This document shows positions 18,563 through 55,630 of a stretch of DNA of 64,000 nucleotides, piece by piece. Positions within the stretch are counted from its first letter, which is position 1, and each line of letters starts with the position of its first letter. Under the pieces are notes generated by a model. It made no database searches, was not told the origin of the DNA, and saw only the letters and a program-made list of their open reading frames with translations. The stretch comes from Heteronotia binoei (lineage: Eukaryota), in assembly GCF_032191835.1 (NCBI RefSeq), contig NC_083230.1, positions 58,590,001-58,654,000 of the forward strand, in the 5' to 3' direction. Made by a program: the position numbers and the translations under genes.

Positions 18563-18708
18563 NNNNNNNNNNNNNNNNNNNNNNNNNNNNNNNNNNNNNN
18601 NNNNNNNNNNNNNNNNNNNNNNNNNNNNNNNNNNNNNNNNNNNNNNNNNNNNNNNNNNNNNNNNNNNNNNNNNNNNNNNNNNNNNNNNNNNNNNNNNNNN
18701 NNNNNNNN
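18563..18708. other. Assembly gap (146 N)
   Basis: Direct read; preceded by a CT-rich low-complexity run. Confidence 1.
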
Positions 18709-22970: not shown

Positions 22971-23330
<360 letters not shown>

Positions 23331-32176: not shown

Positions 32177-32383
<207 letters not shown>

Positions 32384-35300: not shown

Positions 35301-35410
35301 TATATTTTGTTTCACTTTTGTGTAGTGAATCCCACAGTAGAGTTTTCCAGGTGTTGTTAAAATAAAACATACATACTACATAGATATTCAATAAAAATGT
35401 TTTATTTCCT
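32384..35410 (+). other. SYT1: SYT1 long 3'UTR (inferred)
   Basis: About 3 kb AU-rich with no TE recognised, ending at tandem AATAAA; contains Pumilio and neuronal miRNA seed matches. Confidence 0.8.
35361..35395 (+). terminator. SYT1: Tandem AATAAA poly(A) signals of SYT1
   Basis: AATAAA at 35361-35366 and 35390-35395; downstream T-rich CTTTTCTTTCT. Confidence 0.75.
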
Positions 35411-36399
35411 GTTGAGGCCTCGAGTGGTCCAAGCTTTTCTTTCTAAATCTTAAGACTTATCACACACTTTGCTCCACCCTATCAAATCTGACTTCAATCA
35501 ATGCATTAGTGGGATGGGGTTATAGTCTGCCTATGTGTAGTGTGGTTGTGCATCCTAGAAAAGTCACATCATGAACAATGAAAGGGAATAAAAAGCAAAT
35601 CTTTCTTCTGGACCACATGTAGAAATCAGGCTGCAGCCATAATAAGCAGGTGTCTTGCAAGAGGAGCAATAGTTCTAAATAACTCCTTCAAGAAGACGGG
35701 CAGCCCAATCCAGACATTAAGTGGCGGCCGGCCACTCGGGCGTGGACAGATCTACGGCGCCGCTCGTTGGCTTCCAAAGGGGTTTGGGGTGCCGGAGCAC
35801 AGCACGGCCAAGTCCCAAGCGTCGCCTGTAGATGTGTTAAATACACTGGAGCGTGGGCTCCCAGAACGGTATGAGGGCGGGGACAGGAGGGGGCGCTGCC
35901 ACAGGAAAGCCATGGATTGGCTGGCGGTGGCCAAGGAGCCAGCCCACGTGACACTCAGCAGCGGAGATAGGCTGCCCGCATGCCTCACCCCCCCATGCAC
36001 ACACCCAGCCCCATGGAGTGTGTGAATGGGGGTGGCTGTGTAATCCTTGGGGAAGCAACCAGTCAGCACTTACCGCTAGCTCCATGGAGCAGCCTACCTG
36101 CCAAAGGGGCGAAGCCGAGTCCCTGTCAGTGTCCCTTCCATGGGCTGCATGGCCGGATGCCGTCCCCAATGCCGCAGAGCCCCCCTGCCAGGACACAGTA
36201 GGCCACCCACTGCAGGCACCCATGCACCAAAGCTGCCGATGATGGTCGCCACGGTGGCTTGCACTCGTGCCCACCTGCTGAGAATTGGACACCCATGAGG
36301 GGCACAAGGTGACTTTGAAGTGGTTGTGTGCAGGACTCACCTCCCCCCACGCCCAGATCCCCCTTGAATAAGGACTCAACCCAATGTGCAGGGATAAGA

Positions 36400-38020
36400 T
36401 TTATTAAAGCACCAGGCTGCAGAGGGGTTACCGCTTGGCCCCCTCACAGGAAGCCGCCTCAAGCTGCGGTGGGCAGAGGTGGCTGCCTGAGGGGGGCGGC
36501 CAGTCCTGTCAGGGGAAGGTGTGGCATCCCGGATGTCGTCCCCAACAGCGCCCGTGTGCAGCGTCTCCCTGCCCGCCTCACCGGGGGGGGCACCTCACTG
36601 TGGGGGCCCACCTCAGGAGCGGCAGGAGCTCCTGTGGTGGACTGGACAGGGACTGGTCAGTATTGGCGAACAGCCACTCCACCCTCGCGCCCCACTCCTG
36701 CGACTGCCTTGTCATGGCCAGGAGACTGGACAGATGGCCAGTGGCCATGGACACAGTCCCCTCCATCCCCGCCATCCAGTGTTGGCCCACGGCCATGGCC
36801 TCTTGCCATTCCTGTTGCCCCTCCAACCGGTCCCGCTCTATGGCTGGCCACGTGGAGGACAGGGTGGTGGGGATTCTTTGAGTTGGCTGTGGTCCCCAAG
36901 CCGTGGGTCTTGGTTCTCAGCCACCTGCATAGACGTCCGCATCGCTGCCACCTTCCAGATCCCCCAGAGGCCCCCCCAGTTAGGGACCGGAGACAGGGGC
37001 CACCCCGCACACAAGTCTGCAGTGCTTGGCCCCCCCACCCGCATTCCCAGGCCCTGGGGCATGGGGAGGTGATGTGGGTAGATCCAGGGTTTGCAGCATG
37101 AGGGAGGCAGCTAGGGCCGACCATCTGTGTGGGGACACCCTCCATAGGTTCTCCACCACGTCGGTTGCCAGTGTCACAGTGTGGCTACCTATGGAACAGG
37201 ACAGGGGTCAGATGCTGGCATGAGTGGCCAGTCGCAGACACCCCACACCCCGCGCTCAGTGTCGCACCTTGAGGGGACTCAGGCCACTCATAATCTGTGG
37301 ACAGATGGATGTCAGACACTGCGGCATCCATGACCTCCTCACTTGATGTGTCCTCCTCGATTTGGCGCCTTCTGGCGGCTGTCCGGATGTCCTGGGGGCA
37401 GCAGGGAGTGCTGGACCAGCTGACCTCCCATCCCACAGGTGCTGGGCAGCCAGCTCCAGTCCTTGGCTGCCTCACTAGAGCAGCCTCCTGCCTCTGAGCC
37501 TACAGTGGAGCTCGTGGCAGCCTGCGGCAATTCCTGGGAATCACCTGGGGGGGGCAAAGGGCCTCGCCGTCAGAATCTGGCAGTCCCACGGTGGCAGGGG
37601 GGGAGGTGCCAACCTACAGCAGATCACCTCAATGCTGTGGCCAGCTACAGCCACCAGGCAGATAAGGGGTCCCATGATTGTCTCAGAGCCGGACAGGGCC
37701 TGGGCCACCGCCTCCTCATAGGTTGAGCCTTCAGCGATGAGACACCAGACCCGCTTCTTGGCAGGGCCAAAGGAGTCATTCTAATGCTTCAGGGTGGACT
37801 TCTCTGTGCAGGGCACCTGGCTCACAGCAGACACTAGCTCCACCGCCATTCGCCAGAAACCCCACCGACAGGAGTTCGCCCCAACGGCTCTTGTGGCGGC
37901 AAGCGCCACCATGGCATTCTTGGCTACCAAGCCAAAGAAAAGTGCCTTCTCTGCCTCAGTCCAGTTCGGTTGGCGGTAACTCTCAGTCAATTCCAATCTG
38001 TCTCCCGCCATTCCTTCCAT
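36400..38020 (-). pseudogene. Harbinger Myb/SANT DNA-binding protein gene, multi-exon
   Basis: MEGMAG...YRQPNWTEAEKALFFGLV...FWRMAVELVSAVSQVPCT...KH*ND (TAG where W is expected); candidate introns 37617-37545 and 37267-37189; C-terminal AIERDRLEGQQEWQEAM...; AATAAA at 36405-36400. Confidence 0.8.
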
Positions 38021-38300
38021 GGGCAGTGGAATGCAGGAGCTGACCGCAGCTGGCTGATAGTGGTCGCTCTCACAGCGCCTCACCCAACTTTCTCACAGGA
38101 CACCAGCAGGGCATCGGTTGGCCTTGACGGCACCCCGCCACTGCTTGTGCAGGGCCCCTCACAGCTCCAGCGGTGTCTGGAAGCAGTGGTGGGGCGCCTC
38201 GGGGCGGCAGTATGGCCACCGCAGTCCGCACTACAGTGCGCAAACCATGGGGGCCCATGGTGGGTGGTGCCCCCTTATCCCACTGCCAGAGCTCCCCTGG

Positions 38301-39353
38301 ATGTGGCCAGTGCACATCCTCCCCACTCTCTATGTGTGCATTGCACAGTGGCAGTAGAGACGCCGTCGAGCACGCAGGTACCAGGAGCACCTGAGCACTT
38401 TGCGTCCTGAGGATGCCACCTGTCTGGACTGCTTTCGCCTGGACTGCATCACCATCTAGGACCTGCGTGAGCAGCTCAGGGTGAGCCTCTCCAGCCAGGT
38501 GACCACCCCCCGCCCCACCCCTGTCCTCATCTCCCTGCACTTCCTGGTGACCAGCTCCTTCCAGGGTGTGGTAGCCGAGATCCTGGAGGTCTCCCAGTTG
38601 TCAGCTAGCCGCTGCCTCCACTCCTTCCTAGACACCATGCTTCAGCACCTCCAGCAGTGTGCGCGCTTCCCAACAGGCGAAGAGGAGCTGTGGACTGCCA
38701 GGCAAGGAGGAGCTGCGGAGCTGGCTTCACGGTTGCAGGGTTCCCCAATGTTGTGGGGGCTGTGGACTGCACGCATGTCGCCCTGGTGGCCCCACGGGAG
38801 GAACCCATGGTGTACCGGAACAGGCATCACTTCTACAGCCTCAACGTGCAGGCATCCTGTGACCACCAGGCACCCTTCGCAGATCTGGTGGTGAAGTTTC
38901 CAGGGAGTGTACACGATGCCCAGATCTTCACATCTTCGGGCCTCAATCACCTCCTGGCAGTCTGGATGGGCAGGGGTGGTTGCTAGGTAAGGCCACCAGG
39001 TGGCGGCGTGGGGTGCCCCTCGCATCCCTGTCTTCACCTTCCTGTCCTCCACAGGTGACCGAGAGTTGCTGCCCTACCTGCTGATGCCATACCAGGAGGA
39101 CACGCCTGAGGACAAGGCAGCATATAACCAGGCGCACAAGGCCACTCGCATGGTCATTGAGCGTGCCTTCAGGCAGCTGAAGATGAGGTTCCGCTGCCTG
39201 CACCACACAGGTGGCCTACGCAGCATGCAGCCCTTGCCTGTGGCTAATCTGGTCTCTGTGTGTATCTTGCTACACAACATCGCCACCTGTCAATGCCTGC
39301 TGGCCCCCCAGGACCTTCCCCTTCCCCTCCTTTTCACCGATGGGGTAGGATGA
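38301..39353 (+). pseudogene. Harbinger (HARBI1-like) DDE transposase, two exons
   Basis: FRLDCITI*DL; VLISLHFLVTSSFQGVVAEILEVSQLSASRC; GFPNVVGAVDCTHV; YRNRHHFYSLNVQ; FPGSVHDAQIF; WLL-G|D across intron 38987-39054; YNQAHKATRMVIERAF...RFRCL; CILLHNI. Two stops and at least two frameshifts. Confidence 0.95.
38991..39007 (+). promoter_or_regulatory. CTCF-like core motif within the transposase intron
   Basis: GGCCACCAGGTGGCGGC matches the CTCF core consensus CCACCAGG(G/T)GGCG. Confidence 0.45.
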
Positions 39354-42300
39354 GGAAGCGGGAGCATGGGCCACCGCCCAGCAGGACTTTGAGGGGCACT
39401 TGCATCAGGAGCATGGGTGAGCTCACATATGGGCCAATTGGCGCGCAGGCAGGGCACCCAGGGATGAGAGCATGCCGTGAGTGTGGCTGCTCACACACCT
39501 GGGGCTTCGCTCCCATGTATGCTGATACCTCTTGGGCACTTCAGTGTATTATTAAACCAGTATTGTCGGGACCACTCTTGGGATCCCTTCAAAAATTCAT
39601 GCACTTGTTGGAAAAGGCATGGGGAAGATGACGAAATGGTAGGCAGAGATGAAGTTCTGGGGGGAGACAAAAAAAAAAGACAAGATAAAAACGTAGGTAG
39701 GGGACCCGGGAACCTTTGTGCAATGCCAGGCATGCCTCGGCAGGGTTCCTGCATGCCATGGCCGTGGGACTGTCAGTCAGGGCAGCACGGCAGGCATTCT
39801 GTGAGGTGTGAGTGGCAACAGACTCAACTCCAAGCTGAAGCTGCTCCTCAGCAAACAGCGGCCAACGGGGACGATAGCCACCACGCACACCTCTCCATGT
39901 GCTCCCTGGACTGAGCAGGCGCACCTTCAAGTCCACAGGTTTATCTCATTTGCATATCTAGAAGCCCCCCATGGTGGCCCTCGCCGCCCCCTGCTAGTGG
40001 CCCATGCGTGACCCCCCTGAGCCCGCTCCAAAGGGAGCTGGGAGGAGCCGATCATGCCAACACTCTCAGCCAGGACTAACCCGCCCCCAGCGTGTAGCAG
40101 CTGTAAGCCGCCTCAGAACACAGCAGAGGCAGCTTGGCTTAGTGAGCTACTCCCCTGCCTCATTATGCTGGCCCTGTGGGTTCGAGACTGTCCTGCAGCA
40201 GGACTGCTCACACGCCCAGCTTCCCTCTTTATTGAGCCTGCCATCCAGCCGCCATTTTTTGGTCAGCCAAGTCAACTCCCTGGGCCACCCCCCCTTTCCT
40301 GTGGGCACCCACCCTGATCTCAGCCCCCCTGTCAGTGGCATCACAGACCCAGGCAGCGTGGACACATGGTGCAGCCCAGACAAGTGTTTGCCTCACTGTC
40401 TATCAGCCCCCACCCCCCCACCCCGCTATCACCCACTGCATCTCCCACACAATTGCACTAAGTGGGTGCCACAAGAGTCCCCCCGGCCACAGAGCCATGC
40501 CTTTTGGACAGCCATGAGCAGAGTGCGCGGGGGGTACAGGGGGCCGGGGCGAGGTGGGAAAAGTAAAAGACACAGAAGACAAGATGGGCATGATGGGTTA
40601 CGTTTATTGATCTGCAAGCAGGGAGAGCAAGCTTGCACGTGGAGGTTCCTGCTTCCCACAGTCGAAGATGCCGTTGCCGGAGGACACACCAACAGCTGCA
40701 GGGCTGATGGGACCTGCCGGCTGTGCTCCAGCAGCCGCAGAGGCTGGAGTGCAGTGTACACACCTGAAAGACAGAGAGACAGGGGGGAGCCTTGCTGTCT
40801 GCAGGCATAGGACTCCTAGGCAAGCCTGCAGGGAGCAGGGCAAGCGCCCCAGCTTTCTCTGGTGGGGCCATCCCACACAATTCCAACTGTCCTGCGTAAC
40901 GGGCCAACTGACTCGCATGTGAGCCCGCAATCACGCAGCCGTGGAGGGGTCTGGCGCAAGCAGCAGGACCTGCCCTAGATGGCAAGGCGCTGGCTGGGTT
41001 GCGGACAGCCAGGACACGTGTCACACCCCCTTCGCCCCTGCATGGGGATGACCGAGACACGGGGTGGGATGGGGCTGCCAGTGGAATGGACAGCCAAGGC
41101 GCACCCCCACATGAACATGTGCGGTGGCCGGCACCCCGGCCGAAGCCACAACCACACTGGACAGTGTTGGGGGCTGCGGGGACTCCTAGCCGGACTTACC
41201 CATCCATGCAGGGGGCTCTGGAAGCAAGACCTGTTAGGACTGGGAAGCAAAAGTGGTTAAACAGGCAGCCCAAATTTTGCTCACCTCCCTCAAAGTCCAG
41301 CTGCTCTAACTTAACTAACATCCTTCTCTGTGCCGTTCCCTCCACCAAGTGCACCCCTCCTCACACTAAGACCCCACAGAATGGCCCTCCGGAGCAGAGT
41401 GCCTTGCCGTGCGCCCTACCCTCTTTGGGGAGTTGTGCGTGGCAGGAGTCGAAACCTTTGTAGGGAGGGGTGTCACTGATTGGGTGCAGGAGGGGGGCCA
41501 TGCCCAGACCGGAGCAGGAGTGGATTGGTGAGTGATAACACAGCTCCCAAATGGGTTTGTGTGCTGCTGCACCGGCACCACCAGTGTGTGCTTTGTGTTC
41601 CACTAGTGCCTATGAGGTATGCCAGCATTTTGCGTGGCGCAGGTTTGTGCCTGGCGGGGGGGGGGGACGTTCTTGAATCGAAAGCTCTCTGGGAGCAGAC
41701 CAGCAGTGGCCACGCCCCTGGGTCAGGCCCCTCCTACACCGAAGTGCCCACGGTGGCGGCCAGAGAGTGGCACATGCCCCATTTCCGCAGGCGCAGAGGA
41801 GGATACGCCGTTGTAGGTCTCCCTACCACCGGCGTAGCAATAAATCCACTTCCACAGCACTTCCCCCCCCTCTGGATTGTGCTGTAAACCATACTCTCCA
41901 GAGAACGCATATAAATAAAATCACAGTAATATTTGTCCTGGGTTGGGGGGAATCTTTTCTAACTCTCATAATCGCTTATGCCCAGTCACAAAGATTGGGC
42001 TGGCAAAGAATTGTGTTCCCTCTGTACCCATTAACAGAAAGTAATCCCAGCAGCTTCAGCTTTATCAGTGTTTGTGATAGAAGGATGCTTTGATGAAGAG
42101 GAGGCTGATTCATTCTTGGTTTTAGGAAAAGGTATGCAGAAAGTTTTAAGTATTTTAATCCATGACATTTAGCAGCACAAACAACAGAAGGCATTGCTTT
42201 AAAACAGAAACAAAAAGAAATGGAAGGGTGTTGTACACACTACAAGATCTGCTGTGTAACATAATGGAGAAAATGGTAAATCTTTGCTAACAACAGTTGA

Positions 42301-53689: not shown

Positions 53690-55630
53690 GTTTATTAAAT
53701 TTATACCCTTCCCTCCCCGCCAAGGCGGGCTCAGGGCAGCTTACAACAATAGTCATAACAACAATAAGAGATTTAACACGTTAGTGCATCATAATAATAA
53801 AATCAATTAAAATTTAAAATAATTTAAAACAGTTGGTGATAATAACATTCTGGTGTTATTCAGGTTCGATGATGTTCGTATTTCTTGGATTCCTCCTGTT
53901 GTTATAAGTCTCAAAGTCAGCTGAAAGCGAGCTGGAAGAGTGTGGTCTTACAAGCCTTGCAGAACTAGGTGAGGTCCCGCAAGGCTCTAACCTCTTCCGA
54001 CAGCTGGTTCCACCAGTAGGGGGCTGCTACTAAGAAGGCGCGATCCCTGGTACCCGTCAGTCTCACCTCTCTCAGCCCGGGGATCACTAAAAGATGTTGA
54101 ATTCCTGATCTTAGTACCCTCTGGGGAACATGTGGGAACAGTCAGTCTCAGATAAGCAGGTCTTCAGCCATAAAGGGCTTTGAAGGTAATGACCAGCACC
54201 TTGTAGCAAATCTGGTGCAGTTCTTGCAGTGCCGGCTGTATGTGCTCCCACCTGGGCAGCCCCAATAACAGCCTGGCCACCGCATTCTGCACTAGCTGTA
54301 GTTTCCAGCTTCGTGACAAGGGCAGCCCCATGTAGAGGGCATTACAGTAGTCCAATCTTGAGGTGACCGTTGCATGGATCACAGTTGCCAGGTTGCTACA
54401 GTTAAGGAAAGGAGCCAACTGTTTCACCCGCCTAAGATGGAAAAAGGCGGATTTTGCAGTTGCTGCTATCTGGACCTCCATTGTCAAGGAGGACTCCAGT
54501 AGCACCCCCAGCTTCTGACCTTGTGTGCCATTGTCACTGGCTCACTGTCAAAAGTTGGGAGGGGAATTCCCCTGCCTAGACCGCCGTGGCTCAGGCAAAG
54601 AACCTCTGTCTTCATTTGATTCAGCTTCTGTCAGCTCAGTTTAAGCCATCCAGCCTCAGCTTGCAATGCCTGGTCCAAGTTTTCTGGGACATCATCAAAT
54701 CGGCCATCCATCAGTAGATAGAGCTGGGTGTCATCAGCATACTGGTGGCAACCCAGCCCATACCTCCGGGCAATCTGGGCAAAGGGTCGCTGTCCCACCC
54801 AGCCTGAGCCAGAACTCCACGGGCAGCCCCCCCCCCGCACCCACTAGTCCCCCTCCCCACCCAAGGGAACCGGGGAGTTACCCAGGGCGATGCTGGCAGC
54901 CCCTACACCTGATCCCCAACATACCTCTAGGGCTGCAAGCAGAACAACGCCGCCCACAACGCACGCCAGCCCACACAGTCAGTGCACCCATCCTTGGGCA
55001 TGGGGAGATTGGTCACTTTGCAACACCAGCAGCGGTGGGGAAAGAAAGGCACAGATGAAGGAGCACAGCAGAAGAAGGGGCCTGCAGACCGAGCTGTGGC
55101 AGCTGGCGGCACCGCGCTCTGACACTTCTCCATGGCCAAGGACACCCCAGCAGCCTCAGAGAGGCCAAGCCCAAGAACACCTCTCCTTGGCATCCGGGCT
55201 TATCAACAGGGGTGGAGCCAGCTGGGGGGTGGGACCTGGGGAGCGGGGAGGGAACTCCAGGAGGGATAAAAGGCCCAATGGCCAAGAAGTCGAGGAGGAA
55301 GCTGGTTGATGCTGCAGAGGGGCTGCCAACAAAGAGAGATAGCCCAAGTACAGCTGGAGGGGACAGGGAGCCTGAGGTGCAGCAACCCATCTCTCTCTCC
55401 CCCCCTCTCCATTTCTGAGACCTCAGGAGACAACAGGAAAGGGACCAGAGGGGACGGTCACAGTAAGGAAGGCTACGGCCATGTCGGGGAACCCCGGTGG
55501 GCGCCAGAGGGACGACAGTCGCATATAGATGTTAAACAGCATCGGGGATAGAACCACCCCCTGGGGCACACCATAGTTAAGCATGTGTCTCTGAGACGAT
55601 TCTCCCCCAATTGATAATGTTGTTTCCCAA
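53690..55630 (-). mobile_element. L2 LINE 3' portion, interrupted by a solo LTR
   Basis: YGVPQGVVLSPMLFNIYM, CHQYADDTQLY, KSAFFHLRR, SRLDYCNALYMGLP, KLQLVQNAVARLL; 3' end at ~53695. Confidence 0.93.
54791..55517 (+). mobile_element. Solo LTR (Gypsy/ERV type), 727 bp
   Basis: TGTC...GACA termini; 5-bp TSD GTCGC (54786-54790, 55518-55522); TATA-like GATAAAAG ~55264; orientation inferred. Confidence 0.85.

What the first reader, a model, noticed from the sequence alone, without database searches (positions are those of the whole stretch)
35701..41884. Large two-gene Harbinger with head-to-head genes, inserted just past the SYT1 poly(A) site
Transposase (+, ATG ~38301) and Myb/SANT partner (-, ATG ~38020) diverge from a 280-bp GC-box-containing spacer, implying one bidirectional promoter. 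The two-protein system is established for PIF/Harbinger and gave rise to HARBI1 and NAIF1-like host genes. Here both genes fill only ~3.1 kb, leaving ~0.7 kb (left) and ~2.3 kb (right) unexplained. A CpG-rich 6-kb block ~300 bp past the terminator of an essential synaptic gene could affect termination or methylation (inference). The TWA-type target is seen only on the right.
Basis: partly seen in the sequence, partly recalled or inferred. Interest (0 to 1): 0.75.

Follow-up and report, generated by a model that had tools for sequence, protein, structure and literature searches.

The report
Dead Harbinger transposon beside gecko SYT1
This is a long-dead copy of an ordinary cut-and-paste (PIF/Harbinger) jumping gene lying about 3.3 kb past the end of the SYT1 coding sequence in a gecko genome; its enzyme gene is clearly identified but broken in many places, and its back-to-back gene layout is already described for this transposon superfamily.

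Summary
A 6,184-bp block of 61% G+C (35701-41884) sits in 37-43% G+C DNA. It is bounded exactly by a 14-bp terminal inverted repeat with one mismatch, found nowhere else in the window. On the + strand it carries a PIF/Harbinger DDE_Tnp_4 transposase gene (38247 to about 39440, one 68-nt intron). Its closest relatives are two Heteronotia binoei (gecko) gene models, 75-79% identical over the core.

The copy is dead: at least four stop codons, three frameshifts and one in-frame deletion. Its true start is 38247, not 38301, so the spacer is 226 bp.

The divergent minus-strand partner gene (38020 down to about 36400) has the right position, codon periodicity and a poly(A) signal. No profile or database search confirmed it as Myb/SANT.

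The 0.7-kb left arm and 2.3-kb right arm show no coding signal, domain, RNA family or repeat, and remain unexplained. No other copy could be fetched.

The block is not a CpG island (observed/expected 0.39). A head-to-head gene pair is called canonical for Caenorhabditis Harbingers in a 2026 paper.

Verdict: an ordinary decayed member of a known kind, of low interest. The scan had already noted other Harbinger families in this genome.

The parts
35701..35714 (+). Left terminal inverted repeat, CAGCCCAATCCAGA. It is preceded by GGG and there is no TAA/TTA on this side.
   Evidence: 2 matches in the window, 0.06 expected; sequence.
35715..36380 (.). Left arm, about 0.67 kb. G+C-rich and unexplained: no domain, no codon periodicity.
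   Evidence: no Pfam hit; periodicity p=0.41; no Rfam match.
36400..36405 (-). AATAAA on the minus strand, the likely poly(A) signal of the partner gene.
   Evidence: TTTATT at 36400 on the + strand. Its function is inferred.
36581..36916 (-). Open 112-codon piece in the same frame class as the partner's N-terminal piece. It shows codon periodicity and is the probable C-terminal part of the partner protein.
   Evidence: chi-square 19.2, p=0.004, third-position G+C 0.76; translation; no Pfam family.
37188..37780 (-). Middle of the partner gene, broken by stops and at least one frame change. It includes an acidic, serine-rich stretch (37188-37418).
   Evidence: three-frame translation; TGA at 37541-37543.
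37784..38020 (-). N-terminal piece of the partner gene (79 codons from ATG 38020 to TAG 37781-37783). It carries a W/F...E...L pattern and W spacing reminiscent of Myb/SANT-like (trihelix) domains.
   Evidence: ORF; periodicity p=0.06, same phase. Negative tests. AlphaFold2 mean pLDDT 65, two helices.
38021..38246 (.). 226-bp spacer between the two divergent start codons. G+C 0.655, CpG observed/expected 0.54, one GGGCGG box at 38202, no TATA.
   Evidence: Promoter function is inferred, not tested.
38247..38986 (+). Transposase exon 1, decayed. Lesions: TAG at 38355 and 38457, a 12-nt deletion near 38515, a 17-nt duplicated insertion at 38703-38719 (frameshift), and a frameshift near 38965. 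The first catalytic Asp lies in the AVDCTH motif.
38987..39054 (+). 68-nt GT..AG intron (phase 1) that splits the GWLLG|D motif. One H. binoei model reads through the same segment; the other splices it out at different junctions.
   Evidence: donor CTAG|GTAAGG, acceptor CACAG|GTGAC.
39055..39440 (+). Transposase exon 2. It holds the second Asp (GD) and the Glu (VIERAF) of the DDE triad. The C-terminal tail has a frameshift near 39325 and two stops.
   Evidence: DDE_Tnp_4, E=1.5e-10; 78% identity to P0002 over 87 residues.
39551..39556 (+). ATTAAA, the likely poly(A) signal of the transposase gene. An A-rich stretch follows at 39665-39691.
   Evidence: Its function is inferred.
39571..41870 (.). 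Right arm, about 2.3 kb. G+C 0.60 and unexplained: no domain above threshold, no RNA family, no repeat, no similarity to the rest of the element, no clear codon periodicity.
40611..40919 (+). Open frame with a sub-threshold Pfam match to the PEX6 N-terminal domain (PF25394, 21.7 bits against a cut-off of 26). Probably chance.
   Evidence: Not backed or 65 (periodicity p=0.99).
41871..41884 (-). Right terminal inverted repeat (reverse complement CAGCACAATCCAGA).
41885..41887 (.). TAA next to the right end. A possible remnant of the 3-bp target-site duplication, with no counterpart on the left.

Best explanation
The block is one old, inactivated insertion of an autonomous-type PIF/Harbinger DNA transposon of a gecko family. 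When the element was alive, a DDE transposase (+ strand, two exons) and a partner protein (- strand) were transcribed away from each other from a short central spacer. By analogy with studied Harbingers, the partner would bind the subterminal DNA and recruit the transposase, which would cut at the 14-bp inverted repeats and paste the element into a TAA/TTA target. This copy landed about 3.3 kb downstream of the SYT1 stop codon and then decayed in place: both genes are broken, and CpGs are lost in the way expected of methylated DNA.

Shown here: the ends, the transposase and its lesions, and relatives in another gecko annotation.

Inferred: the partner's Myb/SANT nature, the shared promoter, the mode of transposition, and that both arms belong to the element.
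For: - TIR pair at the exact compositional edges, unique in the window.
- DDE_Tnp_4 in two frame pieces.
- 5,115 homologues at E<=0.001. The two best are Heteronotia binoei models named 'putative nuclease HARBI1', at 79% and 75% identity, on two different scaffolds.
- P0001 aligns from its residue 1 at 38247.
- The DDE residues sit in the expected motifs.
- The intron is shared with the H. binoei models.
- Codon periodicity is strong in the transposase (p=6e-6 to 1e-3) and present in the minus-strand partner pieces (p=0.004, 0.06 and 0.11, all in one phase).
- Strand-appropriate poly(A) hexamers lie at 39551 (+) and 36400 (-).
- Multiple stops and frameshifts are present.
- CpG observed/expected is 0.39.
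Against: - No target-site duplication is visible on the left.
- The partner ORF matched no Myb/SANT profile, solved structure or database protein.
- About 3 kb (the arms) has no recognisable feature.
- No second copy could be examined, so it is not shown that the arms travel with the element.
- No expression data could be obtained (no run was listed).
Confidence: 0.85

Rival explanations
1. Composite block. Only the central 3.2 kb, perhaps with short ends, is the Harbinger. Part or all of the 2.3-kb right arm is an unrelated G+C-rich sequence nested in the element or captured by it, and would be absent from other family copies.
For: - The right arm has no codon periodicity.
- It has no Pfam domain above threshold.
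- It has no homologue.
- It has no similarity to the rest of the element.
- The size asymmetry is marked: 0.7 kb against 2.3 kb.
Against: - G+C and CpG content are uniform across the whole block and drop sharply only at the two TIRs.
- No internal TIR/TSD pair or tandem array marks a nested insertion.
- No reverse-transcriptase or other transposon domain was found.
Confidence: 0.25
2. Three-unit element. The right arm once held a third gene, either a second Myb-type gene as in another gecko Harbinger lineage noted by this scan, or a captured host exon such as the N-terminus of PEX6.
For: - Earlier scan notes describe gecko Harbingers with two Myb genes. These are leads, not evidence.
- Minus-strand AATAAA hexamers lie at 40603 and 40228.
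- There is a sub-threshold PEX6_vert_N match, E=3.2e-4, covering model positions 11-93 of 101.
Against: - No Myb or other domain appears in any right-arm frame.
- tblastx finds no paralogy to the left partner gene.
- The PEX6-like frame has no codon periodicity (p=0.99).
- Its protein-atlas recognition score is low.
- It has no PDB or database relative.
- After correction for 65 pieces scanned against Pfam, its E-value is about 0.02.
Confidence: 0.08
3. A domesticated host gene pair (HARBI1/NAIF1-like) rather than a transposon relic.
For: Public annotation names the nearest relatives 'putative nuclease HARBI1'. The DDE residues are retained.
Against: - Both frames are interrupted by several stops and frameshifts.
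- TIRs are present.
- The relatives lie on two different scaffolds and are themselves truncated models.
Confidence: 0.02

Closest known systems
Autonomous PIF/Harbinger transposons of vertebrates (two-gene elements such as zebrafish Harbinger3_DR; my own knowledge plus PMC9179366)
   Same: It has a DDE_Tnp_4 transposase with an intron, short TIRs, a TAA next to one end, and a second gene beside the transposase. Its size is in the several-kb range.
   Different: This copy is dead. The partner could not be shown to be Myb/SANT. The 3-bp duplication is visible on one side only. About half of the length is featureless.
Caenorhabditis Turmoil2-like Harbingers (PMC13668399)
   Same: The transposase gene and the DNA-binding-protein gene lie head to head inside the TIRs. 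The paper calls this arrangement canonical.
   Different: Those are nematode elements of at most 3 kb with a MADF partner. Here the element is 6.2 kb, with long arms and an unclassified partner.
Heteronotia binoei gene models XP_060109813.1 and XP_060098254.1 ('putative nuclease HARBI1')
   Same: They are 75-79% identical over the catalytic core, have the same N-terminus (MGAHGGWCPLI...) and share the same intron segment. They belong to the same transposon family.
   Different: They are automatic models on other loci. Both have Lys where the window copy keeps the catalytic Glu (IKRAF and IKHAF against VIERAF).
HARBI1 / NAIF1 domesticated genes
   Same: They descend from the same transposon superfamily and the same two-protein logic.
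   Different: Those are intact, single-copy, conserved host genes without TIRs. This is a broken, TIR-bounded insertion.

Membership tests
PIF/Harbinger superfamily (transposon) | Transposase of the DDE_Tnp_4 (PF13359) type | tested here: met
   49.9 and 41.3 bits against a cut-off of 24.8, covering model positions 1-69 and 90-158; 654 homologues at E<=1e-10.
PIF/Harbinger superfamily (transposon) | Catalytic D, D, E residues in their conserved motifs | tested here: met
   AVDCTH, the spliced GWLLG|D, and VIERAF align with the same motifs of P0001, P0002 and P0005. Activity is impossible because of the stops and frameshifts.
PIF/Harbinger superfamily (transposon) | Short terminal inverted repeats at both ends | tested here: met
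   14 bp, 13 of 14 matching, unique in 64 kb, at the compositional boundaries.
PIF/Harbinger superfamily (transposon) | 3-bp target-site duplication (TAA/TTA) | tested here: inconclusive
   TAA at 41885-41887 only, and GGG before the left TIR. No empty site or second copy was available.
PIF/Harbinger superfamily (transposon) | Second gene encoding a Myb/SANT-like (or MADF) DNA-binding protein | tested here: inconclusive
   A divergent ORF with codon periodicity exists. There was no hit in Pfam at E<=10, NCBIfam, PDB, the protein atlas or the length-limited homologue search. The AlphaFold2 model has low confidence.
PIF/Harbinger superfamily (transposon) | Multiple copies in the genome (repeat family) | not testable with these tools
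   There is no other copy in the window. Two related models on different H. binoei scaffolds suggest a multi-copy family. No genome or reads were accessible.
HARBI1-type domesticated gene | Intact conserved open reading frame without TIRs | tested here: not met
   stops and frameshifts; TIRs present.
Gecko three-gene Harbinger lineage (earlier scan notes) | A second, different Myb-type gene besides the usual partner | tested here: not met
   no domain, paralogy or codon periodicity in the right arm. Decay could hide it.

The most novel reading that the evidence does not exclude
The 2.3-kb right arm is not junk but a family-wide cargo module carried between the transposase gene and the right TIR. 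It would be a third transcription unit or a captured host fragment; the PEX6 N-terminal-like frame at 40611-40919 is the only hint. That would make this gecko family a cargo-carrying Harbinger.
Probability: 0.07. Interest if true: 0.5.

Novelty: new member of a known kind. Interest (0 to 1): 0.2.

Why it matters
It matters little. The finding documents one more decayed Harbinger family in a gecko, with relatives in Heteronotia binoei that public annotation mislabels as 'HARBI1'. It also gives a clean example of an intron-bearing, head-to-head two-gene layout in a squamate.

It could be useful in three ways:
- as a marker insertion for gecko phylogeny at the SYT1 locus;
- as a caution for annotation pipelines;
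- if the arms prove to be shared by all copies, as a case of a Harbinger with unusually long non-coding or cargo arms.

Nothing here suggests an effect on SYT1.

Tried and rejected
1. Myb/SANT confirmation. All of the following were blank or uninformative:
- Pfam at E<=10 on three partner pieces;
- NCBIfam;
- PDB phmmer;
- the protein atlas (best score 0.88, to bacterial hypothetical proteins);
- The search for homologous proteins (limited to 55-175 aa candidates, so full-length partners were out of reach);
- AlphaFold2 on the single sequence (mean pLDDT 65, so no fold search was run);
- local phmmer of the read-through, with X at the stop, against the 151 fetched proteins.

2. Other copies and expression:
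- The look-up of sequencing runs listed no run.
- A metagenome scan with P0001 found nothing.
- The scan's own index had no look-alike; per the operators, these blanks mean nothing.

3. Arms:
- 55 stop-to-stop pieces of at least 70 aa from the two arms were scanned against Pfam.
- Also tried: Rfam, TRF, blastn and tblastx self-comparison, and a homologue search with the 270-aa right-arm frame.
- The only result was the sub-threshold PEX6_vert_N hit. I rejected it as probably chance.

4. Domesticated-gene reading: rejected because of the lesions.

5. CpG-island reading: rejected (observed/expected 0.39).

6. SYT1 exon sequence was inspected only locally and was sent to no search tool.

7. The Sinzelle et al. 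2008 paper on Harbinger3_DR is not held in the library.
Full report
**What is there.** Between 35701 and 41884 the window changes abruptly from 37-43% to 61% G+C. The two edges of this block carry a 14-bp inverted repeat, CAGCCCAATCCAGA on the left and CAGCACAATCCAGA (reverse complement) on the right. A one-mismatch search finds only these two sites in 64 kb, against 0.06 expected by chance. TAA follows the right end; the left end is preceded by GGG.

**The transposase.**
- Two + strand pieces match Pfam DDE_Tnp_4, covering model positions 1-69 (E=3.6e-13) and 90-158 (E=1.5e-10).
- An exhaustive HMMER search with the 84-residue core found 5,115 relatives. The two best were 79% and 75% identical; the next best was 58%.
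- Those two are Heteronotia binoei (Bynoe's gecko) RefSeq models named 'putative nuclease HARBI1', on two different scaffolds.
The second model (P0002) extends the match to about 39435.
- The start codon is therefore 38247, not about 38301.
- A 68-nt GT..AG intron (38987-39054) splits the conserved GWLLG|D motif. One H. binoei model reads through the same segment; the other splices it out at different junctions, so the intron belongs to the family.
- The three catalytic residues are still readable (AVDCTH, G|D, VIERAF).

The gene is nevertheless dead. Against the H. binoei models it has these lesions:
- TAG stops at 38355-38357 and 38457-38459;
- a 12-nt in-frame deletion near 38515;
- a 17-nt insertion at 38703-38719 that duplicates the sequence 25 nt upstream and shifts the frame;
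- a frameshift near 38965;
- a further frameshift and two stops in the C-terminal tail.

The two copies of the duplicated 21-mer already differ at 3 of 21 positions. This suggests long decay, but it is a rough inference from very few sites.

**The partner gene.** On the minus strand an ATG at 38020 opens a 79-codon frame that ends at a TAG (37781-37783). The same frame continues with another stop at 37541-37543. An acidic, serine-rich stretch follows in a second frame, and a 112-codon open piece (36581-36916) returns to the first frame class.

Evidence that this is a gene:
- Codon-position composition is non-random in 36581-36916 (p=0.004). It is nearly so in the two N-terminal pieces (p=0.06 and 0.11). 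All three have the G+C-rich position in the phase expected for that minus frame. As a positive control, the transposase segments give p=6e-6 to 1e-3.
- A minus-strand AATAAA at 36400-36405 and a plus-strand ATTAAA at 39551 fit the 3' ends of the two genes.

The layout and a W/F-x2-E...W...(W→stop) spacing resemble Myb/SANT-like trihelix domains. That is a resemblance from memory, not a test. Every actual test was blank:
- Pfam at E<=10;
- NCBIfam;
- PDB sequences;
- the protein atlas;
- the homologue search, which could only see proteins of 55-175 aa;
- a single-sequence AlphaFold2 model, too uncertain to search with (mean pLDDT 65).

I therefore rate 'a partner gene exists' as likely and 'it is Myb/SANT' as about 60%.

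**The spacer and the CpG claim.**
- The spacer is 226 bp (38021-38246), with G+C 0.655 and CpG observed/expected 0.54.
- It has one GGGCGG box of the seven in the whole element and no TATA.
- One GC box is no more than its share, so it is no evidence of a promoter.
- The divergent arrangement makes a shared promoter the natural inference for the living element, but nothing here tests it.
- The whole element has CpG observed/expected 0.39 (3.6 CpG per 100 bp, against 0.6-0.7 in the flanks).
- It is richer in CpG than its surroundings only because it is G+C-rich. It is depleted relative to its own composition, as expected for long-methylated, decaying DNA.

**The arms.** The left arm (35715-36380) and the right arm (39571-41870) remain unexplained. 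I scanned all 55 stop-to-stop frames of at least 70 codons in both arms against Pfam at E<=10. I also ran Rfam, TRF and blastn and tblastx self-comparisons, and searched the largest right-arm frame against 5.8 billion proteins. There is no domain above threshold, no RNA family, no repeat, no paralogy to the partner gene and no clear codon periodicity.

The one outlier is a sub-threshold match of 40611-40919 (+) to the vertebrate PEX6 N-terminal domain (PF25394):
- It scores E=3.2e-4 and 21.7 bits against a cut-off of 26, covering model positions 11-93 of 101.
- After correction for the 65 pieces scanned against Pfam, the E-value is about 0.02.
- The frame has no codon structure (p=0.99).
- Its protein-atlas recognition score is low.
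- It has no PDB or database relative.

I treat it as probably chance but record it. Uniform composition up to the two TIRs argues that the arms belong to the element.

**Surroundings.**
- SYT1's last coding exon ends at 32381-32383 on the + strand (…DAMLAVKK-stop). The preceding C2B exon is near 23000.
- AATAAA hexamers lie at 35361, 35390 and 35587.
- The element therefore begins about 3.3 kb after the stop codon and 110-340 bp after candidate poly(A) signals.
- Which signal is used, and whether the insertion is outside the 3' UTR, could not be tested.
- The SYT1 exon sequence was looked at only locally and was sent to no search tool.

**Comparison with what is known.** The element meets the tested defining features of PIF/Harbinger: transposase family, DDE motifs and TIRs. 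It is inconclusive on the target duplication and on the Myb partner. [quoted passage not shown] PMC2213677 reports a variable order of the two ORFs (upstream or downstream) and element lengths of 2.2-25 kb in Medicago. It is not HARBI1 and not a domesticated gene. Earlier notes of this scan describe other Harbinger lineages and Harbinger-derived genes in this same gecko genome, including a three-gene lineage. I looked for a second Myb gene here and found none.

**Verdict.** This is a real but ordinary feature: a dead copy of a gecko Harbinger family, and a new member of a known kind. The only open point of some interest is whether the long right arm is a constant part of the family.

Noticed in passing
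window 40611-40919 (+): A sub-threshold Pfam match to the vertebrate PEX6 N-terminal domain (PF25394, E=3.2e-4, 21.7 bits, cut-off 26) lies inside the right arm. It has no codon periodicity and no other support, so it is probably chance. If real, it would be a captured host exon fragment.
   Followed up: partly
P0001 and P0002 (Heteronotia binoei XP_060109813.1, XP_060098254.1): Both public models of the same transposon family are annotated 'putative nuclease HARBI1'. They are truncated transposon copies, and both have Lys instead of the catalytic Glu (IKRAF, IKHAF). They are likely mislabelled pseudogene copies.
   Followed up: partly
P0005 / P0151 (Anolis sagrei, 684 aa): The next-nearest relative (58% identity in the core) is a long Anolis protein. 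It has about 350 extra N-terminal residues in front of a Harbinger transposase that keeps the GDSGYP and VVERAF motifs. It could be a fusion or domesticated gene.
   Followed up: no
window 23000-23150 and 32200-32383 (+): The last two coding exons of SYT1 (C2B domain and C-terminus). The stop codon is at 32381-32383, and candidate poly(A) hexamers lie at 35361, 35390 and 35587.
   Followed up: partly
window 54164-54505 (-): A 113-codon ORF with a motif typical of the C-terminal part of retrotransposon (LINE-type) ORF2 proteins (…SRLDYCNALY…), inside another G+C-richer patch (54-56 kb).
   Followed up: no
window 18563-18708: A run of 146 N (assembly gap or masked). It was left untouched.
   Followed up: no
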